Shown: positions 9,366 through 50,295, counted from the stretch's first letter. The stretch is DNA of 64,000 bases from IMGVR_UViG_3300035698_029839:233711-297710; one strand, 5' to 3'. The notes: generated by a model from the letters alone, not told the origin. Made by a program: numbers and translations.

Positions 9366-9870
9366 ATGCAATCAAGATAGTATAAAGATTGTCATGGATG
9401 ATGATTTGTCGAAATCTACAATTCACATTATATGTGATATATGTGGTTTAGATATCGATAGTGGTGATAACCCAATGCTCTGTGATCTGTTTATTTATAA
9501 TGAGAATCTAGAGGCAGCAGAGAAATTAGGTATAGAAGCCTATATAGAAGATAAAAAGATAGGAGATAATCCTTATACTTTACTTCAATCTGATCAGATC
9601 CTTCTTAATAAGAGATGGGAGATAGGATTTAATAAGGAAAAAGATAGTTATGAGAAAGAGGCCTTATTAATTTCTGCCGAAAATTTAAAATATGCTCTAG
9701 AAAAAATGGAAGAAGAAAAAACTATTCTTACAGAACAACAAGCAGAACTATCTAAAAACCATACAAAACTATCTAAAAAGGTTAAGAAGCTCTCTAAGAT
9801 AGGATACTTGATGGGTTATAAGTATAAAAAAGACCTATTAAAGATAGTCTTAGAAATTCCAGACAAGTGA
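9352..9870 (+). CDS. Zn-ribbon plus coiled-coil protein
   Basis: CxxC..CxxC; C-terminus IPDK* is encoded by the repeat. Confidence 0.75.
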   Translation: MRCHKCNQDSIKIVMDDDLSKSTIHIICDICGLDIDSGDNPMLCDLFIYNENLEAAEKLGIEAYIEDKKIGDNPYTLLQSDQILLNKRWEIGFNKEKDSYEKEALLISAENLKYALEKMEEEKTILTEQQAELSKNHTKLSKKVKKLSKIGYLMGYKYKKDLLKIVLEIPDK

Positions 9871-9913
9871 TTTTCTAATCCTATATATAAAGAACATATA
9901 TAAAGGAGAAATC

Positions 9914-10267
9914 ATGAGTGATAAGAAAGCATATGTAGACGGTAATTTTGTTGTAGGAGTAGGGTCATATTATCTGTTACGCTGGGCGATAGCCTTTTAC
10001 CCTGCTTTGGTATTTGCAGCATGGATAGTAGAATTAACAAGGCCTGAGGCAGGAGAAAAAGAGACACTCCTTTACTTATTAACTGGCCCTTTATTCTGTA
10101 TAGTCTTTACTTTTTGTATATCTAGAATGTTGTTAGTTATTAAGGAATCATGGCCTTTCCTTGTGGGTCTTTATGCTATTACCTTATACCCGTTTATTAA
10201 ATTTATGCAGTGGCATGGTAGTTCTGGTGATACTCCTTTTCCTGGAGTTGACTGGTTTCCTTGGTAA
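9914..10267 (+). CDS. membrane protein
   Basis: three hydrophobic segments, AAGGAG RBS. Confidence 0.8.
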   Translation: MSDKKAYVDGNFVVGVGSYYLLRWAIAFYPALVFAAWIVELTRPEAGEKETLLYLLTGPLFCIVFTFCISRMLLVIKESWPFLVGLYAITLYPFIKFMQWHGSSGDTPFPGVDWFPW

Positions 10268-10310
10268 TTCCAGACAAGTGGTTTTTTAATAGTATCATAT
10301 GGAGGTAATT

Positions 10311-11273
10311 ATGAATAATAATGTTAAAAAGTTATCAGATATTGAAGCAAGTCCTGTTATTAGGAACAGAACATGGTTTAATGATCTTGATCAAGTATAT
10401 GGAACGAGTATTTCTCCTACTCATAATCTTGGTATGCCTAAAGGTAAGATTAGCTTATGGGCAGGAGAAAGAGGAGTTGGTAAGAGTAGATTGTGTATTG
10501 AGGTAGTCAAGAAATTTACTACTAACTATTCTGATGGTAAGGTTTTATATTTTCTAACAGAAGCTCCTTTGAATGATTTTGCTCAATGGGCAGTTGATGA
10601 TAATTGGCATTATAAGCATATGGTAGAATGTAGTGGTGCTAATAAGATAGATGAGATGGTTGAAATTATTTATCAAGTTAGGCCAAAACTTATATTTATT
10701 GATAGTGTTAACCAGATTGAAGATTTTACAGGCACTGCCAAATCTGCTAAAAGGCTTATAGATGGTGTTGAAGATATAAAAGGTTTAAGAGAAGCTACTT
10801 ATGATGTAGGTGCTCACTTAATCTTATTAGGTCAGATGAATGGAGATGGAAAGACTATTAAAGGTGGTTCAAGTTTGCCTCACTTGGTAGATATAGAGTT
10901 ATATGTAGTTATTGAAGATAAGAATAAGGGTTTATTTAGAATAGAAGTAGGTACAAAGCATAGATATGGCAGAACAGATAGAACTGCTAGGTTCCTGCAT
11001 ACTGACTATGGAGTAAATGAGGCATCTGAATCAGTTACTAATGATTTACCTGATGGTTATAGAAGAGTTTCAGGTTTGAGTCAGAGTGGTTTTATTACTG
11101 TTGGTCCTGATGGCTTGGCAGATACCAATGATCCTGAGTTTTTAGAGCATTTGGAGGCACATAGGTTAATTAACAATATGAACTCTGAATCTGTCTATGA
11201 TCCTGGTGATCCTGGTTTAGGATTACATATTAAGAACAGGGTTCCTACTTTATGGGAAAGATTTATTGGATAA
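10311..11273 (+). CDS. RadA/Sms-like RecA-superfamily ATPase
   Basis: Walker A GERGVGKS, Walker B IFIDS, GGSSLPHLVD and KHRYG matching RadA LEHxVD and KNRFG; GGAGG RBS favours ATG 10311. Confidence 0.8.
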   Translation: MNNNVKKLSDIEASPVIRNRTWFNDLDQVYGTSISPTHNLGMPKGKISLWAGERGVGKSRLCIEVVKKFTTNYSDGKVLYFLTEAPLNDFAQWAVDDNWHYKHMVECSGANKIDEMVEIIYQVRPKLIFIDSVNQIEDFTGTAKSAKRLIDGVEDIKGLREATYDVGAHLILLGQMNGDGKTIKGGSSLPHLVDIELYVVIEDKNKGLFRIEVGTKHRYGRTDRTARFLHTDYGVNEASESVTNDLPDGYRRVSGLSQSGFITVGPDGLADTNDPEFLEHLEAHRLINNMNSESVYDPGDPGLGLHIKNRVPTLWERFIG

Positions 11274-11543
11274 AGTTCTTGTAAAGTGAAAGAGCTTTGG
11301 TTATAATTTTTTTAAAGAAGAGCCCATTCTTATGTAAAATGAGTAAGGATAGGTACTTGAGTCTTTTTTCTATTAACAAATTTAACAATTCGTTAATATA
11401 TTCTTTAAAAAAATTAAAAAGTAGAGATAAAGTTATTGAAAAGTGAAAGTGAGTTAGTATAATAAGAGATATTGTATCACCCCTCCTCCTTTGGGGAGAA
11501 TGATATTTTTTATTGTTTTCCCCAAAATTTTTAAATTAGGGGG

Positions 11544-11572
11544 TTGACAAGTGAAAGTAGATGTGATAGTAT
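11544..11572 (+). promoter_or_regulatory. sigma70-type promoter with AAGTGAAAG spacer box
   Basis: TTGACA-N17-TAGTAT with TG extended -10. Confidence 0.75.
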
Positions 11573-11578
11573 AGAGAT

Positions 11579-11762
11579 TCGCGATAGGAGGTTCTTAATT
11601 GAACTGGCTTATCTATGCGGGTCGATGATTCGTGAATAAGGGGAGAATAGGGATATTAATTTATCTCTATTACTCCTAACTATAAATGGGACTTAGACGG
11701 TTCCCATCGTTACTATGGTTATAGTAGTGAGAGGTACTGGGTTACTTCTCGCTACTATTTTT
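11579..11762 (+). ncRNA. unknown structured small RNA
   Basis: strong promoter, several hairpins, long terminal hairpin plus T run, no long ORF. Confidence 0.5.
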
Positions 11763-12298: not shown

Positions 12299-12371
12299 TG
12301 TCCTTTAGTGTAATGGCTTAGCACGATTGCCTTTGACGCAATCAGTCGAAGTTCGAATCTTCGGAGGACAG
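12299..12371 (+). tRNA. tRNA-Gln(TTG)
   Basis: cloverleaf; ATTGC-CT TTG AC-GCAAT. Confidence 0.9.
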
Positions 12372-12468
12372 CTATGAATAGGATAATGTATAAAAATAAA
12401 AAAAGGAGTATTCCCCTATTATCAGAATATATATAATATAAAGTACATTTTAATAATAGGAGATTGTA

Positions 12469-13182
12469 ATGAAACAAAAAACAGGGCCTAAAAGGACTAG
12501 TATTATATGGCAGATGTCAAAAAAAGATTTTACAGAAAATGTGAAAAAAAGTTCTACTTTTAAAGAGATATTAAAATATTTTGGATTAGAAAATAAAGGT
12601 AGCAATTACAAAACATTAAAAAAAAGATTAGAGGAAGAAAATATAAATTATTCTCATATTCCTACAGGAGTAGGATGTAACAAAGGAATGAAAATAAATA
12701 GAAAAGCTATCTCATTAGAAAAAGTAATGATAGAAAATTCTACTTATTGCAGGGGGACTCTTAAAAAAAGATTATTAAAGAATGGTATGTTAGAAAATAA
12801 ATGTATGATCTGTGATCAACTACCTGAACATAATGGGATTAAATTAGTAATGGTTTTAGATCATATTAATGGAACTCCTAATGATCATAGATTAGAAAAT
12901 TTAAGATTACTTTGTCCTAATTGCAATAGCCAACAATCAACTTTTGCTGGAAAAAGGCATAAAAAACATTATTATTGTGAAAAATGTGGGAATAAAAGAA
13001 AAAATAAACAAAGTAAATATTGTTTTAGTTGTTCTGTTAAATTAAATGGGCAAAATAGAAGAAAAGTTAAAAATAGACCATCTAAAGAAAAATTATTAAA
13101 AGAAATAAAAGAAACTAATTATTGTGCTGTTGGTAGAAAATATGATGTAAGTGATAGTGCTATTAGAAAATGGTTGAAATGA
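12469..13182 (+). CDS. HNH homing endonuclease
   Basis: LDHING..DHRLENLRLLCPNCNS; paralog of 15078. Confidence 0.9.
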   Translation: MKQKTGPKRTSIIWQMSKKDFTENVKKSSTFKEILKYFGLENKGSNYKTLKKRLEEENINYSHIPTGVGCNKGMKINRKAISLEKVMIENSTYCRGTLKKRLLKNGMLENKCMICDQLPEHNGIKLVMVLDHINGTPNDHRLENLRLLCPNCNSQQSTFAGKRHKKHYYCEKCGNKRKNKQSKYCFSCSVKLNGQNRRKVKNRPSKEKLLKEIKETNYCAVGRKYDVSDSAIRKWLK

Positions 13183-13185
13183 TAT

Positions 13186-13259
13186 TCCCATGTAACTCAA
13201 TTAGGCAGAGTGGCACGCTGTTAACGTGTTGGTTGTAGGTTCGATTCCTACCGTGGGAG
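13186..13259 (+). tRNA. tRNA-Asn(GTT)
   Basis: cloverleaf. Confidence 0.9.
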
Positions 13260-13371
13260 TTCGATTCTTTGAAAAGTAAATAGGGGTTCCAAAAGGAACA
13301 CACATTGTGTTAAGTTTTAATTACTAACACATGGAGAGGTATAGCACTGAGTGGTATCTCTCCATGTTTTC

Positions 13372-13445
13372 TGACCTATAGCTTATGTGGGAAAAGCATT
13401 CGTCTTATAAGCGAAAGAGTCCAGGTTCGAATCCTGGTGGGTCAA
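13372..13445 (+). tRNA. tRNA-Ile(TAT)
   Basis: TTCGT-CT TAT AA-GCGAA. Confidence 0.85.
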
Positions 13446-13448
13446 TAT

Positions 13449-13521
13449 AGGCATAAAGCTCAGCAGGCAGAGCATCGTGCTGATATCACGAAGGCCGTTG
13501 GTTCGAATCCAGCTATGCCTA
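13449..13521 (+). tRNA. tRNA-Ile(GAT)
   Basis: cloverleaf. Confidence 0.9.
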
Positions 13522-13589
13522 TTAGAAAGAGGAATTCTTCTTTTTTTCCCGAAATAATATAGAATAAAGGACAAAAGGGAGAATTCATC

Positions 13590-13808
13590 ATGAAAGAAGT
13601 CTTGATAGAATTAGTAAAAAGGGTAAGTAGGAAAGCAGTTATATTAGCAATAGCTATGGTGTTGGTATATATGGTTATTATAACACCGAATGCCGTAAAT
13701 GCAGTGATAGCTATAGGGGTGATTTCTGGTTTATCAATAGTAGGAGCAGGACTTCAATTTTATTTAGATCTTAAAAAGATCAAAGATGACGAAACAGATA
13801 AAATTTAA
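13590..13808 (+). CDS. small two-TM membrane protein (holin-like topology)
   Basis: two TM helices, charged tail, AGGA-N17-GAAA promoter. Confidence 0.6.
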   Translation: MKEVLIELVKRVSRKAVILAIAMVLVYMVIITPNAVNAVIAIGVISGLSIVGAGLQFYLDLKKIKDDETDKI

Positions 13809-13947
13809 GCAGGTTGAATGTGAGTAAGTTATCGCTTATGGAGCCTGATGTGGATGGTTCGATTCCTCCTCTCTCGATTACAAATTGTTCGAGAGATAGC
13901 TTAACGGTAGAGCGCAGTAAAAACACTTATTCCTCCCACATATCTGC
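13809..13947 (+). ncRNA. Y-RNA(YrlA)-like RNA 1 with permuted tRNA module
   Basis: GCAGGTTGA..GTTATCG / CATATCTGC terminal stem; T arm, loop-closed acceptor TCTCTCGA/TCGAGAGA, then D arm. Confidence 0.75.
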
Positions 13948-13960
13948 TTTTTTAAACTTA

Positions 13961-14052: not shown

Positions 14053-14060
14053 TCTTTTTT

Positions 14061-14134
14061 ACCCGCTTCGCTTAGTTGGCTAAAGCATCTGTCCTACAAA
14101 CAGAAGATCGTAGGTTCGAGTCCTATCGCGGGTA
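14061..14134 (+). tRNA. tRNA-Val(TAC)
   Basis: cloverleaf, C33. Confidence 0.85.
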
Positions 14135-19475: not shown

Positions 19476-19900
19476 TTTCCAGACAAGTGGTTTTTTATTA
19501 TTATTAAGTATAAATATTAATTTTTGGTAAAAAGGATTAAAAGATGGTAAAATATGTATTAACTGAAGAACAAGAAAAGAAGTTAAACGATGCAGATCTT
19601 GGACAATGGAAGAAACTAAATAATAAGGGTCAACAAGCTATTAAACAGAGAATGGCGATTGCTGACAGAATTGGACTAAAATTATCTGAAATAAAAAGAA
19701 TAGATTTATGAAGAAATCAGATGAAGACAGTTGTAGTGGTTTTAAAAGAGGATGGACTTCTGATCATGAAGAGTGCATAACATGTAAGAAGAATAGTCCT
19801 GCCAGATATAAAAAGTGCATGCAAGCAGTTAAAAAGTCGTTAAAAGAGAACTTTAGCACCGATGAAGAGATAGAGAAGTGGAAAAAAAAGAAAGTGAGAA

Positions 19901-21588: not shown

Positions 21589-21649
21589 TTATTTCCAGAC
21601 AAGTGGTTTTTTAATATTATATGATGTTAACTATGTAAAAGAGGTAATC

Positions 21650-23245: not shown

Positions 23246-23371
23246 TTTATTCCAGACAACTGGTTTTTCGTAATGATAGAATAAGAGTAGTTAAAAGAGG
23301 TAGTTTGACATTTCTTTCACTTTTTTATTTTTCTCTTGAAAGTGAAAGGGTGCTGCCATATAATAGATGAT

Positions 23372-24076: not shown

Positions 24077-24414
24077 TTTCCAGACAACTGGTTTTTAGAA
24101 AATATAGAATATGGTAAAAAAGAAAAAAGAAGCTAAAAAAGAAGAGCTAAGAGAACATATTCTCTCAGAACAAGAGATGTCGGAATTAGCTAAGGCTAAT
24201 GTCAAAAAAGATATGACAGATGGAGACATTTTCAAGATGGTTAGAAATCTTGAAATAGATGGAGTGGACCAAGGATTCAAATTAATCAATAGTTCAGAGT
24301 TCTATTGGGTATTAATGGAATCAAGAGACAAAATTCCAGACAAGTGATTTTTCTTAACATAGTGTTATTGTGTTGTAAAAATAATAATAGTATTTTGATG
24401 GAGGTCAAAAAACG

Positions 24415-28007: not shown

Positions 28008-28087
28008 ATAATTCCAGACAAGTGGTTTTTTATTGCGGTGGTATGAGAAATGAAATAAAATGAAATTATTAGAAATGGAGAAATGAA

Positions 28088-28849: not shown

Positions 28850-28912
28850 TTCCAGACAACTGATTTTTTAATAGTATAGGTTGTTAATGATAATAAATTT
28901 TGGAGAAACAAA

Positions 28913-29302: not shown

Positions 29303-29805
29303 TAATTCCAGACAAGTGGTTTTTTACTTGACTATAAAGTGAAAGTAAAGTATAATTAAATTTTTGGAGTAAATAAAATGAGTGAATATACAAGATTATA
29401 TAAAGAAGATGTCAGAGCTCCTATTTGGAAAAATATGATAAAAGAGTTAGAATTGCCTAAAGATACAAATGAGATATCAATAAAAATGATATCTTATATG
29501 ACAGAAAGAAATAAGCAGCAAGCAATAGAATTTCAAAAAAACCAGAGTGCTAAAAGCTTAAAAAGTAGTGTGAAATAGAATTAAATTTTTTGGAAAAAAA
29601 TGAAAAAAGATAGAGAAATAAAACTTAAAAAAATAGAGAATTATGTTAAAGACAAAATGAAACTTTTTGGTAATTCAGAAGATATTAGAGGAAAAGCAAT
29701 TATGGAAGTTCTTCAAAATATTGATGCTATTTCAAAAGGTATTATATAATCTAGGAGTGTGTTTTTTGTTATTATATGCTGTTAATATGATTTTTGGAGA
29801 AAAAA

Positions 29806-30546: not shown

Positions 30547-30872
30547 TATAAATATTTGATTTTTATTTATAGAGTGCTTAAATAGAATAAATCAACGTAT
30601 GGATTCACTGGAGATTGAGAAGTTAGCAGATTAATTTTGGAGTTAATAAGATGTTAAATGTAGAGTGTGTAGATAAAAAAGAAAACGGTGTGGAGATAGT
30701 CTTTTCAGATCCAGATGGAGATGAGGCTATTAAGGTGTGTGTTTCTGAGAAAACTGCTTGGAATTTGGAGAGAGAAATTCAAAGACAACGCTATGCGGCG
30801 AAAAAAGAATAATTCCAGACAAGTGGTTTTTTATTATTATAAGTTGTTAATATAATTTTTTAGGAGAAAAAA

Positions 30873-32207: not shown

Positions 32208-32867
32208 ATTCCAGACAAGTGTTTTTTGTTTTAGTAGAATGTAAATAATAATATTAATTTTTCGGCGAAATAGAATGACATATACAGAAACTTACAAAAT
32301 AAAAGTAACAACTTATATAAGAATTAAGTATGATGATGGAGCAAGAGATGGAATTCTTATTGAGAATGAAAAGGATAGTGATTATGTGAAAGTGTTTTTT
32401 CCTGTAGAGATGACAATAGAAGTAATTACTAGAGATATGATTTATAAAGCAGGGAAAATGATGGAAATTAATTTTAATAATTCTGGTTTGTGGGAATAAT
32501 AAAATCCAGATGAATAAAAATTAGTTTGTATGAAATGTTGAAGTAAATAATAATCTTTCGGAGAAAATCATGAATGTGAGAAAAATAGAAATATATATAA
32601 ATCTTTGTGATAGTAGGCGTAGATTCCAAGTTGTAGATGATGATAGCTTTAGTAAGGACATTAAATGTGCCTATGATCTTACTAAAAATTGTTCTCCTGA
32701 ATGTGCAACATGTAGGATATGGGGATCTTCCAAGAAAGCGTCATGCGACAGGGTAGGAGAGGGTTTTGATATAGGCTCTCTTGAATAATTCCAGACAAGT
32801 GGTTTTTCAATAGTATGGTATAGTGAAGTATAAAAACTAATAATATTAAATAATGGAGAAACGAAAA

Positions 32868-33452: not shown

Positions 33453-33568
33453 TAGTTTCGACTAATTCCTACTGATAAGGGCAAGTTAATAGCTTGCCCT
33501 TATAATTCCAGACAAGTGATTTTCTATTTTGGTATAGTGTTAATGTTATTTTATATTGGAGAAATAAG

Positions 33569-34270: not shown

Positions 34271-34589
34271 TTTTTATTGATTTTATTTCTCCAACATGAG
34301 GAGCGTGGTTGATTCCATGCTCCTCACTCCATTTCCAGACAAGTGGTTTTTTATATTGGTAGATTATGATAAAAGAAATAAAAAAACTTAGAGAGCAAAC
34401 AAATAAAGCAGAAGTTGCTTTGTATCAGGCAGTTATGGATTTAGGCAATCATATGAATAAGTGCAATTGTGATGATTTGCATTTTTCGAGTTCAGTTAGA
34501 TATGATTTTGTTAATACTATTTCTCATCATGAGGTTCATACATTTTGTCTTAATTGTGGTGGATTTATTACTTTAACGGAGATATAAAA

Positions 34590-35162: not shown

Positions 35163-35221
35163 TTTCCTAATGGATAATTCCAGACAAGTGATTTTTTGTT
35201 ATTATAGGTTGTTAATAAGAA

Positions 35222-35362: not shown

Positions 35363-35677
35363 ATGAGTAATTTAGCTTATATACAAACAGTTGAAGTAAA
35401 GAAAACCTATGCAGAAGAAATAGTTATAGATGTAAGAGTCTGGGATAATTTTACTGAGGGAGACTCTTATATAGGAGAAAAGGGACAAGTAGGAGATAGG
35501 GGAGTTGATGTAAAAGATGATATGTCTATTCTCCAGTATTGTAAAGATATTGGTTCTGATGATAGTGCTAGTATTTGTAGTGTAATAGATAGTATTCTCG
35601 AAAATAAAAAGGGTGTAGAAATCAATGGCACTTTTTATGAGTGGGACGAAATAAAACATATATTTCCAGACAACTGA
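35363..35677 (+). CDS. hypothetical protein
   Basis: ends FPDN* inside the repeat. Confidence 0.7.
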   Translation: MSNLAYIQTVEVKKTYAEEIVIDVRVWDNFTEGDSYIGEKGQVGDRGVDVKDDMSILQYCKDIGSDDSASICSVIDSILENKKGVEINGTFYEWDEIKHIFPDN

Positions 35678-35955
35678 TTTTTTAATAGGGTAGAATATGG
35701 ATGATAAAATTCTAAAAAATTTAATAGCTATCATAGAGAATTTTGATTTTCAGGTTATGTGGAATGCTGATTTTGGAAAATATTGTGTTCTTCGTCATAT
35801 AGTCCATTATATTGATGGTGAAGCAATGGTTAATTTTAGAGATTTTAGAGCAAAACATATAGACTTATATAATTGTTCTATGGATGATTTTATATTTTTT
35901 CGGAAATCACAAATGACAGAAATATTAAAACATATAAAAAAGTGAGGGTATTAAA

Positions 35956-36729: not shown

Positions 36730-37006
36730 TTCCAGACAACTGATTTTTTAGTTATGTAGGTTGTTAATGATAATTTTTCTTGGAGATAAAAATGAGTAAA
36801 ATGAAAATTGCTATTTTGTTTGAAGCCAACGGTTCTGGAGATACAATAAATAGAACTTGGGGAGAAGATATTATCGAATATAGTAAAACCGATGATATAC
36901 AAAACATTCTTGATGAAGCAATAAATAAAACAAATGAAGCATTAGAGGAAGTCCAAACTTCTGATAGGGCTGTACACTCTTTTGTTTTAGAATTTTTGGG
37001 GAAATA

Positions 37007-37300: not shown

Positions 37301-38165
37301 TGAAGTTGTCGGTTAATATAGATGAAAAAACAGCAGAAGTTAATTTTGGTTCTCTTACATTTGATTCTGGCAAAAAAATAATACTTGATAAAGGAGAAGT
37401 AGAAGAAGTAAGAGCACGTCTCAAATTAGCAAAGGCAGAGGGTAAGCTCTGTGCAACAGATTCTTTAGAACCTATCGCTCATGATAAAGAATTCTTTGTT
37501 ACAGGAGCTTATGTAAAGGGAGTCAAGTTTGGGACAAAGAGCCTGTTAGTGGTAACAAGCATAGATTCTGATACATTTTGCGATGGAGCAGAATGCAATG
37601 ATAGAGTAGAAAAAGAATACGGACTGTGATAATTCCAGACAAGTGGTTTTTTACTTGTGTATAAAGTGAAAGTAAGGTATAATTAAATTTTTGGAATTGG
37701 ATAATTTTAATCTTGTATTTATATGTTGCAGTTTGCTTTATGGTAGAGCTTAGTAAAACTAATATATATAAAGAGAATAAGGAAAGAGTAGGACTTCGAG
37801 TCATTGCCTTAATTATTATAGGGTTGATCTGGTTACCTGCTGTTATCGCAAAGATTGTTCCTAATATGCTGGAAGATTGGGCATCTTAATTTTTGCAGAA
37901 AGAAGAGAATAATATACTACTATGAATATCATGTGGAAAATAGAAACAGTCTTGAAGGTTGATGGGACTAAGACAACAGTGAAGGTAGCCCCCACACAGG
38001 TATGGGAAGGTATAAACGTCTCAGATTCGATCCTGAACCATTTAAGAGGTACTTCAACAGCACATATAACCTATAATAACCAGATTTTCAAAGATATACC
38101 TATAAACTGGTATTTAATAGAGAATTAACTAATTCCAGACAAGTGATTTTTTAATAGGATAGATT

Positions 38166-38516
38166 ATGATTATTAAACAAAAAATGGATACTAAGCCAGT
38201 AGTTATTGAAACTACAAAGTCTATGAAAAAAGATGTTGATATATTTTTTTATGAGGATAATGAGGAACAGGAACAGAAACAAATTATAACACTGAATATA
38301 TATTATGAAGATAGAGATGGGGAAAATTGGTTAGACCATTTTACAGTTAATGAAGATGTAACTCAAATTGAGGATAGAGCAGATGTTGCAAGTGAAGTGC
38401 TTGACCATTTACACGAAGAAATATCACAACAATCGGAGATACAATCAGTCTGTGATACTGTTGATAGAATAGTAGATGAAACAATTAAGAGACTTAAGAT
38501 TCAAGAGGTAAACTAA
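38166..38516 (+). CDS. hypothetical protein
   Basis: follows repeat. Confidence 0.65.
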   Translation: MIIKQKMDTKPVVIETTKSMKKDVDIFFYEDNEEQEQKQIITLNIYYEDRDGENWLDHFTVNEDVTQIEDRADVASEVLDHLHEEISQQSEIQSVCDTVDRIVDETIKRLKIQEVN

Positions 38517-39031: not shown

Positions 39032-39064
39032 TTCCAGACAAATGAAAATTTGATTAGGTAGGTT

Positions 39065-39916
39065 ATGAAGATACAAACATTTTCAGTTGTAGTCGGTGGT
39101 AAAAAATGTAATGCTCATTGTCCTTATTGTGTTTCTAAAATGACTGGGTTAGAAGATTGTTCAGAAACAGGATATATTAATGAGCGTAATTTTCACAAGG
39201 CCTGTCAGTTTGCAAAACAATCTGGAGTTAGTACTGTATTATTAACAGGTAAGGGAGAACCTACTCTTTATATGAATCAGATTGATAGGTACCTTAACAT
39301 ATTAGAACAGTATGATTTTCCTTTTATAGAGCTTCAAACAAATGGAATGGATTTGCCATTACATAATGAAGAGTTATTTAATTGGTATAATAAGGGTATG
39401 ACTACTGTTTGTCTTTCTTGTGCTCACTGGTTGACAGATAGGAATAGAGAAATTTTTGGAGAGTTATTTGAACCTTTGGAGAAGAATATAAACCGCTTGC
39501 ACCGAGCAGGACTTTCTGTGAGAGCAAGTTGTGTAATGTGTAAGGATTATATTGATAATGCATCATCAGTAGGGGCTTTTGCTTTGTGGTGTAAAGAACA
39601 TAAAGTAGAACAATTCACTGCTCGTCCTGTCGGCATTGATGAAAATAGTGATAATGAGAAAATCAAAGAATGGGTTAGAGAACATTCTATATCTAAAATA
39701 CAACAAAAAGAAGTAGAAACACTTTTTGAAAAGGTTGGTTTTCTTTTGTTGGAATTAGCTCATGGTGCTAAAGTATATGACTATTATGGACAAAATGTCT
39801 CTATAAATAGTTGTCTCACTCATAGTCCAGATCCTGATGATATTAGACAGTTGATATTTTCTCCTGATGGTCATTTAAGATATTCTTGGGTGTATGATGG
39901 TGCTATTATAATCTAA
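39065..39916 (+). CDS. radical SAM protein
   Basis: CNAHCPYC, TGKGEP, LQTNG. Confidence 0.9.
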   Translation: MKIQTFSVVVGGKKCNAHCPYCVSKMTGLEDCSETGYINERNFHKACQFAKQSGVSTVLLTGKGEPTLYMNQIDRYLNILEQYDFPFIELQTNGMDLPLHNEELFNWYNKGMTTVCLSCAHWLTDRNREIFGELFEPLEKNINRLHRAGLSVRASCVMCKDYIDNASSVGAFALWCKEHKVEQFTARPVGIDENSDNEKIKEWVREHSISKIQQKEVETLFEKVGFLLLELAHGAKVYDYYGQNVSINSCLTHSPDPDDIRQLIFSPDGHLRYSWVYDGAIII

Positions 39917-39973
39917 TTCCAGACAAATGGTTTTATGTTTATGTAGGTTGTTAATTAAACTTTCGGAGTAAAT

Positions 39974-40453: not shown

Positions 40454-40946
40454 TTCCAGACAAGTGATTTTTTGATAGGGTAGATTATGAAAATCTTTAC
40501 TAAACAAAATATCACCATTTTGATTATTACTTTTATTATTGCAATAATTCCTTGTTGTATAGGATTAAAGAGAGGAAAACAAATAAAATTACAAAAAGAG
40601 TATATAATAGTATTGGAGAAAAAATTAAATGGCTAAACAAAAGAATTTTTTATGTAAGTTTAATGTTACGAACTGTGATACTGAAATAAATTTTTTCTAT
40701 ATCGATCAGGGGAAGAATGAAGAAGAAGTTATTGAAAAAAACGAAGTAGAACACGATGCTTGCGGTCTTGATACCGAAGAATCTCCTGTTGGTGGTTGTA
40801 TTGGTGAAAAATGCACAGAACTTTGTAATGTTTATCCTATCACCGAATCACAGAAGAAATTTTTGAACAGTGTGGGTATCTTCTAATTCCAGACAAGTGG
40901 TTTTCTATTTGTGTAGGTTGTTAATATTATTTTTCGGAGAAACAAG

Positions 40947-41240: not shown

Positions 41241-42229
41241 ATAGTGTAGCCCTGCGAGATTATACTTTTTGGAGAAAAAATGAAAGTTAAAAAGACAATT
41301 TATAGAGTAGGAAATGGTTGGTATAATTTTGAAAATGTCCCACAAGGTTTTGTTAAGATTTGTAATCTTGCTTGCGGAACTGATATAAAAGCGTTAAATC
41401 AAGCTAAAAGAATGAACTCAAATTGCGAATATGAAATTAAGACGATGGAGAATTAAAATGACAGAAAAAGAAAAAATAGAAGAACAGAAACAAGAGCAAC
41501 AATGTAGAATTACTGCTGAAATTCTTAAAATTAAAGATAAGAATATTTTGATAAATCTTCAATCAGTAATAGATGTAAAATTACAAAAAATACTGAAGAA
41601 TTAAAAATGAAAATGAGAATATATTATGCAGGACTTGATGGCGCAATTGGTTGTATAGCTATTGAGGGAAGTGGTGAATGGAATCTTTTAGAGTTAAATA
41701 GTAGAGATGGAAGTGTTTGTAGACTAGGTGAACATATACTTAAAAAACTTAAAGATAATGATAATTAAACCTTATAATTCCAGACAAGTGGTTTTGTGCT
41801 TGTGTAGGTTGTTAATGTTAATTTATATTGGAGAAAAAAATGGTTCATATAACTGTTGCTAAAATAAATGGAGAAGAAGTTAGATATGATGCTTGTGTAG
41901 AAAAAGGGAAAAAACCAGATTGGTTGGAGACTTTTACATATCTTGGAGAAGGGACAATTTATTCTATCAACGGGATATTACAATTTGAATGTAATGTATG
42001 TGATTTTTATAAAAAGAATCTTTAAGAGTAAATTATGATAGATAAATATAAACCATATAAACAAGGTGTTATGTTAATTGGTGGTCAAGAAAAATTTAAT
42101 GCTTTAGAGCAGATATGGAGAAATATCACTACCTATATTGATAAGGTAGAAATATTCAAAAAAAGAGCAACAAAAGCAGGATATAATTATAATCAAATTA
42201 TGTGCTTTTTAGAAATGTAGGAGAAAATA

Positions 42230-42604: not shown

Positions 42605-42664
42605 TTCCAGACAAATGGTTTTTTTCTCTTATAGATTGTTAATGATAACTTTTGGAGAAATAGA

Positions 42665-43279: not shown

Positions 43280-43342
43280 TTCCAGACAACCGATTTTTTG
43301 CTTTGGTAGGTTGTTAATACTACTTATTTATGGAGAAATAAA

Positions 43343-44398: not shown

Positions 44399-45005
44399 GA
44401 TATATTTTTCCAGATGTTTGTATACAGTATAAAGACCATTTATTTTTAATTTAAGAAAGAATGGTGAAGCAAGAAAGACAAGAGTATATAAGAATAAAAG
44501 CAAAGTATAATTTATAATTTATAAATCATAAAAACAATGTAACTAGATAAGGAGAGAAAATGGACCCGAATGATTTAATCAATTATGATCCTGAAGATGT
44601 TCAAAATGTATTTGAGTAATTCCAGACAATCGGTTTTATGAAAAGGTAAGGTATGATATTTAAACATAGAGAAACTCAGAAACCTGCATTATGGATAACT
44701 CCTTATAATGCAAACTGGCGGGATCAAGATGATCCTAATTTGTATAAAATTACAGACTGGACAGATTTGCCAGACTCTCAGCCTTTTTATTCACAACTAG
44801 GAATACCTATAGAAATATGGAAAGGGCAAGGAAAGAAAGCTCTTTGGTTCTATTTTCTGGCTTTCCTAAAAGAAGATCATAGGTTTGTACATGATTTTTG
44901 GTTCTTTCTTTTGCCCTCTGGTTTTCCTGATAAGATTATTGGTTAATTCCAGACAAGCGATTTTTTATTATTATAGGTTGTTAATACTATTTTTGGAGAG
45001 AAAAA

Positions 45006-45470: not shown

Positions 45471-45923
45471 TTCCAGACAAGTGATTTTCCGATGTTATAG
45501 AGTATGGCAAAAGGAAAAAAACATTCTGTTTTGAGAGTAAGAAAAAAGAGTTTAACGGATAGAACTCGTCTCAATACTATGGTTATTCCTGACAAAAAGA
45601 AAACAAAAAACAAAAAGAAATGCAGAAAGAAGGTAAATTATGACGACTAGAAAGGACACATTCGGAGTATTTGTCTACACGAAAAAAAATGATAGAAATG
45701 TTTCTTATGAGTATTTCTCAGAAAATAAAAAAGCAGTTACAGCTGCTAAAAAAACCTTTTCTGACCTGCCGAATAAGAAAGATTGTTATGTAGAAGTATG
45801 GGAACAGGACGAGAGAGGGATGTGGGGAAGTGTTGGAGAGCCTATTTGGAAATCAGATAAGTAATTCCAGACAAGTGATTTTTTCTTTCTATAACTTGTT
45901 AATGTTAATTTAATGGAGAAATA

Positions 45924-46229
45924 ATGATAGAAATAATGATAGAAATAATGATTGGTGCATTGCTTGCGATTGTTGCTTATTTGTTTTTGGGTTATCTTTG
46001 GAAACAAAGGAAACAGAAGAAACAGTACAAAAAATGTGTTTATCAGGTGGTTGAAATGCTTAGAGCATACAACAGAAACCCTGCTGATATAAAAAATTGC
46101 GAAACACAATATGAGGCTGTTTGTAAGGCAACTGAATATTTGACTGCTACTGTTTGTGAAGAAATGTTGCAATATCTCCCTAAAGAAGAACAAATAGATT
46201 ATGAAAAACAGTTTAAGAGAGATAAGTAG
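45924..46229 (+). CDS. small membrane-anchored protein
   Basis: TM segment; ATGATAGAAATA tandem at start. Confidence 0.65.
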   Translation: MIEIMIEIMIGALLAIVAYLFLGYLWKQRKQKKQYKKCVYQVVEMLRAYNRNPADIKNCETQYEAVCKATEYLTATVCEEMLQYLPKEEQIDYEKQFKRDK

Positions 46230-48231
46230 ATTATGAGAACATTAAACAAAAGACAAAAGAAAATTCTGGACAAATGGTTCGAGACAATAAAAAACGAGCC
46301 AGGACTAGGTGTGGCAGATGTTGTTGAAGACTTATTGCCATATGATATATGGAAAGAACTCGAGAGGCTAAACGATCACGAGACTATCTACCAGAATATC
46401 AACAGATATATCAATGACAAAGCTATGGCAGACTAGTTTCCAGACAACTGATTTTCAGGAGAGATATATTATGACAGATAAGATAAAACAAATATTTGAG
46501 CATTTTATGGCCCTGAGATTTGCTCATATAAAAGTTGCTGATCCTTATTATAAAGAGTGGCAAGATAGATTTGAAACTGGTATAGAGTGGCAAAAGTCAG
46601 ACTACTCTAATCGGTTTGCACTAAAAACTCTTGCTCCAGATCTTTATCCTGATGATAAAGATGATTTCTTTATAAGAGAGTAATTCCAGACAACTGATTT
46701 TTTACTCTTATAGGTTGTTAATCGCAACACCGAATAGGAGAAACAAATGCAAACTGCTACAAAATTACAATATGATTATTGATTGTTATAATTCCAGACA
46801 AATGGTTTTCTGGAACAGTATAATGTAAATAGACGAGATATAACCCTAAAGTAAAGCCTGAAAGAGAGGTGCTAGATGCGAAGTTAAACTAACTATTTAT
46901 TAATGGGATATTTTTAGAGAATTTTTGAACTTCGAGTTTTTGTGGTCTTCTCAAGCAAGTAAAAAGACCACCAGCAATTATTCTTTTTAGCTTGTTTTTG
47001 ATTTGTCAAAAGTCCCTCATTTTGAGGAGAGATGAGGGACTATTCCTTTTCCAGACAAGTGATTTTCTCTTATTGTAAGTTGTTAATGATTATCTTTTGG
47101 AGATAAAAAATGTTTATAATATTAGCAACAGGAAATTGGCCAGGAGCTTTCACGATAGTCGGTGTTGCTTTTGCTTTTGCTTGGTAGATGAGGGGCACTT
47201 AAAATGAGTAAAGTAAGAAGATGTCCTTGGTGTAATAAAGTTGTTGTAGGACACCCTAATAAGAAATTCTGTAACACTAAACACAAAGATAAATATCATA
47301 ACACTAAAAACCCTAGAGGAATATACAAACACTTGCACCCTGATAATATCTCAATAGAAGATGAAATGCACCCTTGCGATCCGCACTCGTTAGGTCAAGA
47401 ATAGTTTTCCAGACAAATGGTTTTTTGTTTCTCTAATGTATGGCAAAGAAAAAGAAAATTAAAATAAGACGACCATTTTTAGGCTTTGAAAATAAAGCAA
47501 AAGATGAGATAATAATTGATGAAGAAAAGATAAAACAAACTTTCCCTGATATACAACAAAGATTAGAATATGTTAATGCACTAATAAATAAATTCTAGAA
47601 AAAAGAAAAATGAAAGTTGAAAAAGCAATACAATACTATAAAGAACGTCTTATCCGCAAGGCAAAGAAAAACGGATTGTGGGAAAACTTTGGACAAGAAG
47701 AAATAGGTATATTAGAAGAGATTTACTCCAAACATAAATACAAAGATGATGGAGTTTGGGATAAGATAGAAGCTTTTGATAATTGGTGTATGAATTGTGA
47801 TTTAGGAGTACTAAAAAATGAATAATGGAACAATCAGAGTGCTAGGAGATATGCCAACAGAGTTAAGATGTCCGTATGGCTGCGATGGTGGTGATGTTAC
47901 AGTCGATTCTAAAACAGGAAAATGTAAAATTTGCGGCAGAGTTTACAATATAGAACCTACGCAAATAATAGTAGGGGTTTTTCCAGACAACTGATTTTTT
48001 GCTTTTGTAGGTTGTTAATCGAAACCTTGCGGAGATATAAAATGGACTGGTTAGATAAGAAAATACAAGAACAAAAACATAATATTGATATTATGAAAAG
48101 AGTTTGCGATCCTTTTGAACCTGCTGATTTACAGGAAAAAAAAGAACGCGGAGAGCTTGACGAATAACTTCCAGACAAGTGGTTTTGTGCTTGTGTAGGT
48201 TGTTAATCGAAACCTTTTAGGAGTAAACGAA

Positions 48232-48543
48232 ATGAAGTTAATGACAAAAGAAATCCTGGATAAAATACCTGCTTTGTATGCAGACGAAAACATTCCACTT
48301 GGTGAAAAAATCTGTTATGTTAGATTCTTTCACCCTTTTTCAAGTTGGAAATGGTTCGCAACGGAATTTGACCCCGAAACAGGTATATTTTTTGGATGGG
48401 TTGATGGTTCTTTTCCTGAATGGGGAAATTTTTCTCTTGAAGAAATGCAAGGTGTTAAGGTTAGAGGTTTGGGAATTGAAAGAGATATGCACTTTACCCC
48501 CAAACCAATGAAAGAAATATCCGAATATAAAGAAAGAGGTTAA
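48232..48543 (+). CDS. DUF2958-family protein
   Basis: WKWFATE.D....FFGWVDG...EWG.FSL.E....IERD.HF. Confidence 0.8.
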
Positions 48544-48692
48544 AACAGAAGCCTTGTTATCCTTTCCCGATAGTCTTTAGTTGCAAGTCGGTAATAAATT
48601 AAAGATGAAGGATAGCAAGGCATTTTTCCAGACAAGTGGTTTTTTGTTTGTGTAGGTTGTTAATCGAAACCTTTTTTTAGGAGTAAACGAAA

Positions 48693-48959
48693 ATGGCAAA
48701 AAAATCATTCAGAACGGACGAGGCTTTTGCAAGTATTGCGACAGCAATCAATTTAGTTGCAGCCGAAATGGAAAAGCCAAAAGAACAGCAAAACGAAAAA
48801 AGAGCGGGACAGGTTGCTTTGGCAGCAGTCAAAGTTATTGTTGATTCTGAAGCAGCATCAATGAATAGTGATAAATTTGACCTTGCCCCGATAGCAGAAA
48901 TTGAGGGAAAAATTGAGCAAGCAGTCGGGACAATCGAACCGCCGCCACTAACATTTTAA
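48693..48959 (+). CDS. hypothetical protein
   Basis: AGGAG RBS, terminator downstream. Confidence 0.75.
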   Translation: MAKKSFRTDEAFASIATAINLVAAEMEKPKEQQNEKRAGQVALAAVKVIVDSEAASMNSDKFDLAPIAEIEGKIEQAVGTIEPPPLTF

Positions 48960-49649
48960 GGTTTTCGGTTTGCCCCCTGTCTGATGCAGGGGGTTTTTCT
49001 TTTCCAGACAAGTGGTTTTTTACTATTATAGATTGATAAGTTAATAATCTTTTTTAGGAGTAAAAAATGATACAAGTAAAAACAACAAAAAAACCTATCG
49101 AACTTGGGGCAATTCCAAAAAACACGATGGCGCATACAAAAGGTCTCGATGAGATTGATTTGTGGGCGGCAAAAGTCGGAAAAGCAGAAAAAAGAAAAAG
49201 AGAAATAACACCCGTTAAAAAACATATTGTTTGTACTTAATACCTCAAAACCTTGCCTCTGCTTATCTAATAAATAAGCAGGGGCACCTTTTCCAGACAA
49301 GTGGTTTTTTACTCTTATAGATTGTTATTTGAAAAGTAAATAAAAGAGCCGAAAGAAATTAGTGAGATATTGTTTAAGGCATAGGGTTACAGACCTAAAG
49401 AATGCGCAAGGGCGAAGCCCCTGAGAACTAACTAACAAGTCTGATTAGTCTTTTCTGTAAGAAGATAGCATATATAGACAATATCCTACTACTTCCTTTC
49501 TGCCCAATTTTGGAAACTACTAATTTTGTTTTTCATAGCCCCATCCAGCGGTGGGTAATAACACTGGACGTAATAAGGAATAAATTCCAGACAGGTGGTT
49601 TTTTATTATTATAGTTTGTTAATGATAACCTTTTTTTAGGAGTGAAAAA

Positions 49650-49943
49650 ATGTTAGGGAAAAAAACAAATTGTGATTTATCAGCAGGGATAGCAAAACTT
49701 GACCTTGAAAAACTTACAAAACAGGTAGAAATTCACTTTTATTCTCTTATGGAGAAAATAAGACGAAAATCATCTAGTATAATAAACGATAGTCTAAAAA
49801 TAGAAGATAGAAAAGATAGTTTATCTTCTATGTCGGCAACGGGTGCTGATGAATTTACTAGATTATCTGAAAGCCTCGCAGAGACAACCGAATTATTACA
49901 TACATTATACAACACAACAGATAGAGAAATAATTATCGAATAA
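49650..49943 (+). CDS. hypothetical protein
   Basis: repeat cassette. Confidence 0.7.
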   Translation: MLGKKTNCDLSAGIAKLDLEKLTKQVEIHFYSLMEKIRRKSSSIINDSLKIEDRKDSLSSMSATGADEFTRLSESLAETTELLHTLYNTTDREIIIE

Positions 49944-50295
49944 TAAAAATTTGGCAACTTTCCAGACAGATGGTTTTTTGTTATAGTAGGTTGTTAATGA
50001 TAACCTTTTTTTAGGAGAAAAAAACAATGTTAGACTTTATTGATGTTATAGATTTAACAAGTGAAAAAGATGAGGGAAGAAATAGACAAACATCTTTGTC
50101 AATAAGTGATAAAAAACCTCTTGAATTAGGTGTTGTCGGTGGAATATCTCACAATACAAATATTACTTTTGATAAAATCAATGCTCAAAAGATGATTGAT
50201 TTTTGTCAAACGATAATAAATAAAGAATAATTCCAGACAGGTGGTTTTTTGTTATAGTAGGTTGTTAATGATAACCTTTTTTTAGGAGTAAAAAA

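What the first reader, a model, noticed from the sequence alone, without database searches (positions are those of the whole stretch)
9857..50240. Dozens of cassette-like units delimited by TTCCAGACAA abutting the previous gene's end
Seen: all dispersed copies are on the + strand. At least 15 begin on the base immediately after a TAA (e.g. 10268, 28850, 36730, 39917, 45471, 50231). Three supply the gene's final codons and stop (IPDK*, IPDK*, FPDN*), and four follow tRNA 3' ends within 5 nt. Downstream there is typically a TANNNT -10 about 17 nt later (TAGGTT, TATAAT), then GTTAAT and a GGAG RBS. Whole modules are near-identical before unrelated genes (29306 vs 37633; 41778/48169/48626; 49585/49960/50231). 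Known: analogous to T4 MotA-box promoters and to PeSL mobile promoter cassettes of T4-type phages. Inference: a promoter class that doubles as a recombination joint for shuffling accessory genes.
Basis: partly seen in the sequence, partly recalled or inferred. Interest (0 to 1): 0.75.

Follow-up and report, generated by a model that had tools for sequence, protein, structure and literature searches.

The report
Megaphage promoter box with candidate regulator
About 45 small accessory genes of an uncultured salt-lake megaphage each carry the same portable promoter module, headed by the 10-base box TTCCAGACAA, and a new winged-helix-like phage protein that guards its own gene with inverted copies of the box is probably what reads it.

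Summary
TTCCAGACAA occurs 45 times in the window against 0.13 expected. There are 44 co-directional modules between 9857 and 50240.

The consensus is TAA, box, GTGR, T-tract, seven variable bases, then TAnnnT at +27 to +32. After that comes either GTTAAT, a GGAG ribosome site and the ATG, or an ATG exactly at +33 (10 sites).

The window is the end of a 298-kb contig of a megaphage from a salt-lake metagenome. Two relatives of 351 and 548 kb keep the identical box at orthologous intergenic sites, although their proteins are only 25-75% identical.

A 234-aa protein of unknown family (window 8661-9365) has only a winged-helix-like core. In all ten lineages examined its gene sits behind a canonical sigma-70 promoter flanked by two inverted box pairs. 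When the box differs in a lineage, both these operators and the promoters of the next genes change with it.

Best reading: a phage-specific, activator-dependent promoter class, MotA-like in logic but not in family.

Some modules are 91-96% identical in front of unrelated genes, as with PeSL cassettes. Recombination itself was not shown.

The transcription start (+33 or about +39) is unresolved, because no RNA run was listed.

The parts
8500..8539 (.). Operator pair 1: TTGTCTGGAA, 20 nt, TTCCAGACAA, upstream of the -35 of the promoter of the candidate regulator gene
   Evidence: The same layout is found in all ten lineages examined.
8552..8580 (+). Canonical sigma-70-type promoter TTGCAA, 17 nt, TAAGAT, with AAGTGAA in the spacer ('class E')
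   Evidence: The counterparts in relatives are TTGACA-N17-TATGAT, TAGTAT, TACAAT or TAGAAT.
8593..8632 (.). Operator pair 2: TTGTCTGGAA, 20 nt, TTCCAGACAA, downstream of the -10 element, in the 5' leader
8661..9365 (+). Gene of P0001 (234 aa), the candidate box-binding regulator
   Evidence: No Pfam, PHROG, NCBIfam or PDB sequence hit. AlphaFold2 pLDDT 91. Only weak winged-helix matches, Z 4-5. More than 120 homologue clusters at 43-71% identity.
9352..9870 (+). Overlapping gene of P0002 (172 aa, CxxC...CxxC N-terminus). Its last codons IPDK* are supplied by box 9857.
   Evidence: An overlapping or closely following gene is present after the regulator gene in every relative examined.
9857..9895 (+). 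Box module; overlaps the stop of the gene before; ribosome site and ATG at +57
10268..10306 (+). Box module before the AAA ATPase gene; TAGTAT at +22, GGAGG at +33
   Evidence: The orthologous box is present in G001, G002 and six other lineages.
19477..19515 (+). Box module 1 nt after tRNA-Cys
21593..21631 (+). Box module 4 nt after tRNA-Leu; TATGAT then GTTAAC
23250..23288 (+). Box module 3 nt after tRNA-Trp; TAGAAT
24078..24116 (+). Box module 1 nt after tRNA-Leu; short class, ATG at +33
24334..24372 (+). Box module that supplies IPDK* of the gene before. This overlap is conserved in G002.
28012..28050 (+). Box module directly after a terminator hairpin
28850..28888 (+). Box module, long class (TAGGTT GTTAAT, then GGAG)
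29306..29370 (+). Composite module: box followed by the sigma-70-type promoter TTGACT-N17-TATAAT; 93% identical to module 37633
30813..30851 (+). Box module, long class, before the PARP-like gene
32209..32247 (+). Box module; TAGAAT shifted by 1 nt
32789..32827 (+). Box module; the box is conserved before the orthologues in G001 and G002
33506..33544 (+). Box module, long class, after a hairpin
34333..34371 (+). Box module, short class (ATG +33). The G001 orthologue also starts at +33 of its own box.
35178..35216 (+). Box module, long class
35664..35702 (+). Box module, short class; supplies FPDN* of the gene before
36730..36768 (+). Box module, long class
37633..37697 (+). Composite module (box plus sigma-70-type promoter), twin of 29306
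38133..38171 (+). Box module, short class (ATG +33)
39032..39070 (+). Box module, short class, before the radical-SAM gene. Its CxxxCxxC motif starts at residue 15, so the ATG at +33 is the real start.
39917..39955 (+). Box module, long class
40454..40492 (+). Box module, short class
40887..40925 (+). Box module, long class
41778..41816 (+). Box module, long class
42605..42643 (+). Box module, long class
43280..43318 (+). Box module, long class
44620..44658 (+). Box module, short class
44947..44985 (+). Box module, long class
45471..45509 (+). Box module, short class
45865..45903 (+). Box module, long class
46438..46476 (+). Box module, ATG at +33, with AGGAG inside the module
46684..46722 (+). 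Box module, long class
46792..46830 (+). Box module (TATAAT GTAAAT) with no ORF of 35 aa or more within 200 nt downstream
47049..47087 (+). Box module, long class, directly after a 13-bp hairpin
47407..47445 (+). Box module, short class
47981..48019 (+). Box module, long class; supplies FPDN*
48169..48207 (+). Box module, long class (leader sub-family CGAAACC)
48626..48664 (+). Box module, long class (same sub-family)
49002..49040 (+). Box module directly after a terminator (9-bp GC stem plus T run)
49291..49329 (+). Box module after a hairpin; no ORF of 35 aa or more within 200 nt downstream
49585..49650 (+). Module with TTCCAGACAG; 87-91% identical through the ribosome site to 49960 and 50231
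49960..50027 (+). Module with TTCCAGACAG, same sub-family
50231..50296 (+). Module with TTCCAGACAG, same sub-family; the last module of the array

Best explanation
Each unit is a portable promoter-plus-leader module of a phage-specific promoter class, used in the accessory-gene and tRNA region of an uncultured megaphage.

Shown:
- The module is a linear DNA motif: an A/T-rich or TAA flank, an invariant 10-bp box, an A- or T-tract, and a -10-like TAnnnT exactly 17 bp after the box.
- It always points at the gene downstream.
- It is conserved at orthologous sites in relatives.

Inferred:
- Host RNA polymerase with its primary sigma reads the -10-like element.
- The box stands where a -35 element would be. 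It is read by a co-evolving phage factor, most likely the 234-aa winged-helix-like protein P0001 (window 8661-9365).
- P0001 is made early from a canonical sigma-70 promoter. It then switches on the roughly 50 box promoters.
- It shuts off its own promoter through four boxes, arranged as two inverted pairs that flank that promoter.

About a fifth of the modules place the ATG exactly at +33. This suggests either a start site at +33 and leaderless mRNAs, or translation of those genes from read-through transcripts.

Because the 60-70-bp modules are so alike, they probably also recombine or convert one another. That would move promoters and genes as cassettes.
For: Strength of the motif:
- 45 copies against 0.13 expected in the window.
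- 50 copies on the + strand and 3 on the - strand in the contig, 45 of them inside 42 kb.
- Position-specific conservation of box, tract and TAnnnT.

Direction. In G001, 32 of 35 copies lie on the - strand with the genes. The 3 copies on the + strand each precede a + strand gene.

Placement. Modules directly follow stop codons, hairpins or terminators, and tRNAs.

DNA-level rather than RNA-level:
- RNAalifold finds 0 pairs in 30 modules.
- No Rfam family other than tRNA matches the window.
- The T-tract is replaced by an A-tract in many G001 modules.

Footprint across relatives. The identical box lies before orthologous genes in G000, G001 and G002, while the flanks and the proteins (25-75% identity) have diverged.

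Link to P0001:
- In 10 of 10 lineages the gene lies behind TTGACA-N17-TAnnAT flanked by inverted pairs of the lineage's own box.
- The same lineage-specific box stands before the orthologous third gene and the AAA ATPase gene. The variants are TTCCAGACAA, ATCCAGAC, TACCAGAGAA, TTCCAGAGAA, TACCAGAAAA and TGGCCAAAA.
- The GACA of the box is not kept across lineages, so a host -35 contact is not what constrains it.
- P0001 has a confident model (pLDDT 91) whose only structural matches are winged-helix DNA-binding domains.

No phage RNA polymerase was found.

Module kinship. Identity of 91-96% is limited to box-through-ribosome-site, before unrelated ORFs. Three window-specific gene blocks relative to G002 are exact box-to-box units.
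Against: - No transcription start is mapped. No RNA run was listed.
- Binding of P0001 to the box is inferred only from gene neighbourhood and covariation. The fold matches are weak (Z about 5, no Foldseek E below 0.1), and the complex job with DNA was not folded.
- The geometry is not self-consistent for a sigma-70 promoter. With the -10 at +27 to +32 the start should be near +39, yet 10 real genes start at +33, and one ribosome site lies at +33 to +37.
- The short class is enriched for GG at +23 to +26 (my count from the sequences). This could be a weak ribosome site and would need a transcript that starts further upstream.
- The phage encodes two group-3/4 sigma factors that could read the box instead.
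- Activation as opposed to repression is not decided by any result.
- Recombination was not shown. The contigs simply break at the repeats, and no close relative is available.
Confidence: 0.55

Rival explanations
1. The box is the -35 element of promoters read directly by one of the phage's own sigma factors (a middle or late class). P0001 is only one of the regulated genes, not the reader.
For: Two sigma-70-family genes (210 and 240 aa, group 3/4-like) lie behind a class E promoter at contig position 179067-181000. G001 has at least four. The rigid 17-bp spacing between box and TAnnnT suits a single protein that reads both elements. A co-evolving sigma would also explain lineage-specific boxes.
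Against: The -10-like element (TAGAAT, TATAAT, TAGGTT) looks like that of a primary sigma, not of group 3/4 sigmas (established knowledge). The inverted pairs with a 20-bp gap on both sides of a sigma-70 promoter occur only at the P0001 gene, in all ten lineages. That fits operators of an autoregulated DNA-binding protein, not promoters. A 10-bp invariant box is long for sigma region 4.
Confidence: 0.2
2. The modules are weak host-sigma early promoters (CAGACA, 18 nt, TAGGTT), and the box is the operator of a repressor (P0001) that shuts the whole accessory region off later.
For: The consensus scan calls several modules sigma-70-like, as CAGACA-N17/18-TAGAAT, TATAGT or TATATT. The four boxes around P0001's own promoter look like repression. 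At contig positions 221520 and 227911 a box lies just downstream of a class E promoter, which is an operator-like position.
Against: The GACA part is lost in other lineages (CAGAGA, CAGAAA, GGCCAAAA), although their class E promoters keep TTGACA. The phage already has a strong canonical promoter class of about 30 copies. Poor -35 elements with a fixed box are the hallmark of activator-dependent promoters (established knowledge: pho box, MotA box).
Confidence: 0.15
3. The element acts at the RNA level. It would be a site for processing, stability or ribosome loading in long polycistronic transcripts, and this would fix the distance to the ATG.
For: An ATG lies exactly at +33 in 10 modules here, at least 9 in G001, and others in L080 and L079. 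The U-rich tract could bind ribosomal protein S1 (inference).
Against: No conserved RNA structure and no Rfam match. The tract may be A or T. Modules follow terminators and tRNAs, where a new transcript is needed. Operator pair 1 lies upstream of the promoter it flanks, so it is not in that transcript.
Confidence: 0.05
4. The repeats are attachment sites of a site-specific cassette system, like an integron.
For: The cassettes are co-directional, and each repeat abuts the end of the gene before it.
Against: No tyrosine recombinase was found in G000 or in the complete G001. The repeat has no internal inverted-repeat structure. It carries a -10-like element and a ribosome site, and it is stable at orthologous positions across distant relatives.
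Confidence: 0.03

Closest known systems
T4 middle promoters (MotA box with MotA and AsiA)
   Same: Dozens of promoters with a good -10 element and no canonical -35. A phage-specific box takes the place of the -35 and is read by an early phage protein, so the early-to-middle switch is built into the promoter sequence.
   Different: The box sequence and position differ: TTCCAGACAA, 17 bp before the -10-like element. No MotA_activ domain is found in either genome. The candidate reader is an unrelated new family with a winged-helix-like core. Its gene carries a conserved four-box auto-operator. An AsiA-like partner is not known.
PeSL cassettes of T4-type phages (PMC2839356, PMC4122927)
   Same: About 50 intergenic modules per genome, concentrated in a hyperplastic region before small genes of unknown function. 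Each runs from the stop codon of the gene before, in an AT-rich context, through a promoter to the ribosome site and start codon. Modules are near-identical before unrelated genes.
   Different: PeSLs carry a consensus sigma-70 promoter and an internal stem-loop. Here the -35 is replaced by a lineage-specific box, and no stem-loop is part of the module. PeSL-mediated indels and mini-circles were shown experimentally. Here recombination is only inferred.
Pho-box promoters read by the winged-helix activator PhoB
   Same: A winged-helix protein binds a box that replaces the -35 element and recruits polymerase with the primary sigma (established knowledge).
   Different: PhoB binds direct repeats as a phosphorylated dimer. 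Here there is a single box at target promoters, and inverted pairs 20 bp apart at the factor's own gene. There is no receiver domain.
Phage sigma-specific promoter classes (for example SPO1 gp28 and gp33/34)
   Same: Phage-specific conserved hexamers at fixed spacing define a temporal class (established knowledge).
   Different: The -10-like element here is like that of a primary sigma. The operator architecture points to a separate DNA-binding protein.

Membership tests
T4 MotA-dependent middle promoter | MotA box (a/t)(a/t)(a/t)TGCTT(t/c)A centred near -30 | tested here: not met
   The box is TTCCAGACAA and has no TGCTT core.
T4 MotA-dependent middle promoter | Sigma-70-type -10 element, with no canonical -35 | tested here: met
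   TAnnnT lies at a fixed position in 35 of 44 modules. The best -35-like hexamer is CAGACA, at 18-bp spacing.
T4 MotA-dependent middle promoter | The genome encodes MotA (MotA_activ domain) | tested here: not met
   PF09114 gives no match at E of 1 or less in G000 or in the complete G001. P0001 has no Pfam hit. The MotA C-terminal domain family and AsiA were not searched.
PeSL cassette | Intergenic module from the upstream stop codon, in an AT-rich context, to the ribosome site and start codon | tested here: met
   Definition taken from PMC2839356, section 13.
PeSL cassette | Consensus sigma-70 -35 and -10 elements | tested here: not met
   The -35 is replaced by the box. Only the two composite modules, 29306 and 37633, hold a consensus promoter.
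PeSL cassette | Stem-loop (terminator or attenuator) inside the module | tested here: not met
   0 consensus pairs in 30 modules. At least six modules are merely preceded by a separate hairpin.
PeSL cassette | Clustered in a hyperplastic region before small genes of unknown function | tested here: met
   45 of 53 copies lie within 42 kb. Variable genes are interleaved with conserved ones relative to G002.
PeSL cassette | Indel breakpoints between close relatives fall in the modules; mini-circles exist | not testable with these tools
   The closest relative has 71% identity in P0001. The runs are held only as assembled contigs, which break at the repeats.
Canonical sigma-70 promoter | Transcription start 6-9 nt downstream of the -10 hexamer | not testable with these tools
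   No RNA run was listed. The ATG at +33 abuts the hexamer in 10 modules, which does not fit this geometry.
Integron cassette array | Tyrosine recombinase gene present, and attC sites with internal inverted repeats | tested here: not met
   PF00589 is absent from G000 and G001. No structure is predicted in the repeat. Adjacency to the array was therefore not examined.
Promoter of a phage-encoded RNA polymerase | The genome encodes a single- or multi-subunit RNA polymerase | tested here: inconclusive
   PF00562, PF00623 and PF00940 give no match. The PF00940 controls could not ring. No catalytic motif of the NADFDGD, DxDGD or T7 type was found in six-frame scans. A very divergent enzyme, for instance in the 5139-aa ORF of G001 that has no domain hit, cannot be excluded.

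The most novel reading that the evidence does not exclude
The P0001 family is a new kind of phage transcription initiation factor. It docks host polymerase on a 10-bp box and fixes the start exactly 33 bp downstream, directly after the TAnnnT element. That geometry fits no sigma-70-family promoter. A fifth of the regulon would then be made as leaderless mRNA. Its DNA specificity has drifted from lineage to lineage together with about 50 portable promoter modules, and these modules serve as the homology for shuffling accessory genes in marine and saline megaphages.
Probability: 0.25. Interest if true: 0.75.

Novelty: new variant of a known kind. Interest (0 to 1): 0.55.

Why it matters
Megaphages of 300-550 kb are known almost only from metagenomes, and how they time their gene expression is unknown.

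This work gives a complete, testable regulon:
- a defined box;
- about 50 targets per genome;
- a candidate regulator of a new protein family with its own operator;
- natural specificity variants in related lineages, which act as a ready-made swap experiment.

The modules would be compact, orthogonal promoter parts. They also offer a second, independent example, besides the T4-type PeSLs, of promoters that may double as the seams along which accessory genes are exchanged. The fixed ATG at +33 raises a concrete question about where polymerase starts on such promoters.

Tried and rejected
- RNA evidence. No RNA run was listed for the region, so no start sites could be read.
- Read laying on 44500-50400 with four DNA runs. 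Only low-depth assembled contigs were available. All 'joints' and loose ends have 20-43-nt sides that sit in modules, which is what repeats longer than the assembler's word give. They were not used for or against recombination.
- Complex prediction with two copies of P0001 and the operator DNA was not folded. It is no evidence either way.
- Fold searches of the P0001 model gave nothing significant in PDB by Foldseek, BFVD or AlphaFold DB clusters. The exhaustive aligner gave only winged-helix domains at Z 4-5.
- A profile search of PDB sequences gave 0 hits, and the ESM Atlas gave no usable hit.
- The 'phages' collection has no near match to 12 kb of the window.
- An exact 18-mer scan of viral contigs gave one chance hit. 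The degenerate pattern found the relatives.
- Literature. The box string occurs in 128 papers; the ten listed are on unrelated subjects, none about phage.
- A mini-hairpin (CCAG ACAA CTGG) plus U run acting as a terminator was rejected. Position +10 is C in only 10 of 54 copies, position +13 is A in 20, and the run can be A.
- An archaeal-type promoter was rejected. The box is not TATA-like, and the phage encodes bacterial sigma factors.
- A phage RNA polymerase was sought by three Pfam families and by motif scans and was not found.

Full report
**What the window is.** The window is the last 64 kb of a 297,710-bp IMG/VR virus contig (G000). The contig has 31% G+C and CheckV estimates it 62% complete. 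DNA runs that hold it are labelled salt-lake metagenomes.
- Nearly all genes are on the + strand.
- The window holds 33 tRNA genes between 12.3 and 24.1 kb.
- It also holds many small ORFs without family hits, and a few accessory genes: a PARP-like protein, an SPFH protein, a radical-SAM protein, and a fused cytidylyltransferase-like/dephospho-CoA kinase.

**The observation.** TTCCAGACAA occurs 45 times in the window, against 0.13 expected.
- In the whole contig there are 50 copies on the + strand and 3 on the - strand. Of these 53, 45 lie at contig positions 242-284 kb, that is, in this window.
- Aligned on the box, the motif reads: T/A-A-A at -3 to -1, the invariant box at 0 to 9, G-T-G-R, T-tract at +14 to +19, about seven variable bases, then T27, A28 and T32 (83% each).
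- Of the 44 modules, 41 have the tract, 35 have TAnnnT exactly at +27 to +32, and 25 have TAA immediately before the box.
- After the hexamer there are two sharp classes. In 22 modules GTTAAT follows, then a GGAG ribosome site and an ATG at +57 to +81. In 10 modules an ATG follows exactly at +33 (binomial P about 3e-8).
The counts are 17 boxes right after a real TAA stop, 4 boxes that supply IPDK* or FPDN*, and 4 boxes 1-4 nt after a tRNA.

**Promoter, not RNA element or attachment site.**
- The module always points at the gene behind it. In the relative G001, 32 of 35 boxes are on the - strand with the genes. The three + strand boxes each precede a + strand gene.
- Several modules directly follow hairpins or terminators.
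- Thirty aligned modules give no consensus RNA structure at all, and Rfam finds only tRNAs.
- In G001 the T-tract is often an A-tract at the same place. That fits DNA shape, not a U run.
- No tyrosine recombinase is encoded.

**Conservation.** A degenerate pattern scan of IMG/VR found two relatives that use the same box.
- G001 is 547,943 bp, estimated 100% complete, with 35 copies. G002 is 350,866 bp with 26 copies.
- Syntenic proteins are 25-67% identical to G001 and 30-77% to G002.
- The exact box nevertheless stands before orthologous genes in two or all three genomes (AAA ATPase, the 199-aa ORF at 32853 and the PARP-like gene in all three; the 557-aa ORF and the 253-aa ORF at 28088 in G000 and G002), while the bases around it have diverged.
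- Even the overlap in which the box encodes the C-terminal IPDK* of a 78-aa protein is kept in G002.

**The candidate reader.** Just upstream of the array lies a canonical promoter, TTGCAA-17-TAAGAT (8552-8580).
- It is flanked on each side by an inverted pair, TTGTCTGGAA-20 nt-TTCCAGACAA (8500-8539 and 8593-8632).
- These hold the only - strand boxes in the window, and two of the three in the contig.
- The gene behind it (8661-9365, P0001, 234 aa) has no Pfam, PHROG, NCBIfam or PDB sequence match.
- It has more than 120 homologue clusters at 43-71% identity in metagenomes, on contigs of up to 394 kb.
- Its AlphaFold2 model is confident (pLDDT 91).
- Foldseek finds nothing significant in PDB, BFVD or AlphaFold DB clusters.
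- Most of the best matches of the exhaustive aligner are winged-helix DNA-binding domains at Z 4-5.2: Fur, OmpR, forkhead, ORC/Cdc6, TFE and histone H1/H5. This is a weak but uniform signal.

**Covariation.** I fetched the gene's surroundings in seven further lineages.
- In every one the gene sits behind TTGACA-N17-TAnnAT flanked by inverted pairs (one pair seen in L077, degenerate in L080), but the repeated word differs.
- The words are ATCCAGACA (L104, L080), TACCAGA (L077), TTCCAGA(A/G) (L081, L105), TACCATAAAA (L079) and TGGGCCAAA or TTGGCCAA (L106).
- The same lineage-specific word stands before the orthologous third gene and the AAA ATPase gene downstream. In L080 it recurs 10 times in 20 kb with the same tract and spacing.
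- So operators and target promoters change together. The GACA that could pass for a host -35 is not conserved.
- The most economical reading is an autoregulated DNA-binding protein, P0001, that reads the box. This is inference; no binding test was possible.

**Which polymerase.**
- No beta, beta' or T7-type polymerase family and no catalytic motif was found in G000 or in the complete G001.
- A very divergent enzyme cannot be excluded. G001 has a 5139-aa ORF without any domain.
- The phage does encode sigma-70-family proteins of group 3/4 type. These are the main rival readers.
- The -10-like element (TAGAAT, TATAAT, TAGGTT) looks like a primary-sigma element. This favours host holoenzyme plus a box-binding activator, as at MotA- or PhoB-dependent promoters (established knowledge).
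- A second promoter class, TTGA(A/C)A-AAGTGAAAG-TATAAT, occurs about 30 times across the contig. It drives both P0001 and the sigma operon. That fits an early class that launches the regulators.

**The unresolved point: the start site.**
- With the -10 at +27 to +32, a sigma-70 holoenzyme should start near +39.
- Yet ten genes start at +33. One is a radical-SAM protein whose cysteine motif begins at residue 15. Another is a gene whose G001 orthologue also starts at +33 of its own box.
- The same distance recurs in G002, L080 and L079.
- Either transcription starts at +33 (T at +32, purine at +33 in 91% of copies) and these mRNAs are leaderless, or these genes are translated from read-through transcripts.
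- The short-class modules are enriched for GG at +23 to +26 (about 12 of 19 against 2 of 20 in the long class; my count). This could be a weak ribosome site and would favour read-through.
- No RNA run was listed.

**Cassette behaviour.**
- Pairwise identity of the variable part of the modules has a median of 49%, but it reaches 96% (49960/50231), 93% (29306/37633) and 91% (49585/50231).
- Identity begins at the box, or at the TAA, and stops at the ribosome site or ATG. The ORFs on both sides are unrelated.
- Such sub-family identity at non-consensus positions indicates recent copying or conversion of whole modules. This is as described for PeSLs of T4-type phages (PMC2839356; PMC4122927).
- Against G002, conserved genes are interleaved with unrelated ones. 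Three window-specific blocks (29306-30812, 32209-32788, 33506-34332) are exact box-to-box units.
- This is consistent with module-mediated exchange, but it is not decisive, because nearly every gene junction here carries a module.
- The laid contigs only break at the repeats.

**Verdict.** The elements are a clade-wide, phage-specific promoter class with a probable new regulator. Their logic is that of MotA-type middle promoters, and their genomic habit is that of PeSL cassettes, but they are members of neither family. The recombination role and the start site remain open.

Noticed in passing
window 8552-8580, 11270-11310, 11430-11470, 11540-11580, 16020-16065, 23325-23365, 26135-26170, 29327-29355, 37654-37682, 52130-52175; contig-wide in G000: A second promoter class: TTGA(A/C)A, then AAGTGAAAG in the spacer, then TATAAT. 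AAGTGAA occurs 61 times on the + strand and 9 on the - strand of the contig, and about 30 copies are in full promoter context. It precedes the P0001 gene and the sigma-factor operon (contig position 179067), and the same spacer word appears in G001. What reads the spacer word is unknown.
   Followed up: partly
window 8019-8500: A 480-bp stretch with no ORF of 50 aa or more lies upstream of operator pair 1. The - strand box at 8500-8509 is followed leftwards by a T-tract and TAATCT at the standard spacing. This looks like a divergent box promoter that would transcribe this stretch. Part of the stretch (TTTTAATAAAAAAATCTATTA) is conserved in G002. It could be a non-coding RNA or a regulatory or origin region.
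   Followed up: no
window 12299-24076: 33 tRNA genes (19 amino-acid specificities, including three tRNA-Met), interspersed with small ORFs, class E promoters and box modules.
   Followed up: partly
window 30873-32207: A 444-aa protein with WGR, PARP regulatory and PARP catalytic domains (Pfam E 2e-25). It is conserved at 56-67% identity in G001 and G002, each time downstream of a box (in G001 and G002 a short ORF or a canonical promoter lies between).
   Followed up: partly
window 12469-13182 and 15078-15767: Two paralogous ORFs (237 and 229 aa) inside the tRNA region. Both match the same single gene of G001 (61% and 67% identity) and of G002.
   Followed up: no
window 56090-57226: A fused cytidylyltransferase-like plus dephospho-CoA kinase protein (378 aa). 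This suggests a phage-encoded coenzyme A or nucleotide cofactor step.
   Followed up: no
G000 contig 126364-129978 (L004:6364-9978) and 46821-49805 (L003:6821-9805): A type IA topoisomerase interrupted by an intein with a LAGLIDADG homing endonuclease. The 994-aa helicase (L003:6821-9805) aligns to a much shorter helicase profile (987 residues over about 550 profile positions), so it probably carries an insertion; its Pfam domains were not searched, and the weak Hint/intein hits belong to a different ORF (L003:4264-6153).
   Followed up: no
G001 486468-501887 (L111:468-15887, - strand): A single 5139-aa ORF with no Pfam domain at all in the complete 548-kb relative.
   Followed up: partly
L079:17432-18478 and L106:5289-5492: Relatives carry an IS605 OrfB/TnpB (Cas12f-like) gene (L079) and a CsrA homologue (L106) close to the regulator locus.
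   Followed up: no
window 46792-46830 and 49291-49329: Two well-formed box modules are not followed by any ORF of 35 aa or more within 200 nt. They may drive small RNAs or very short peptides.
   Followed up: no
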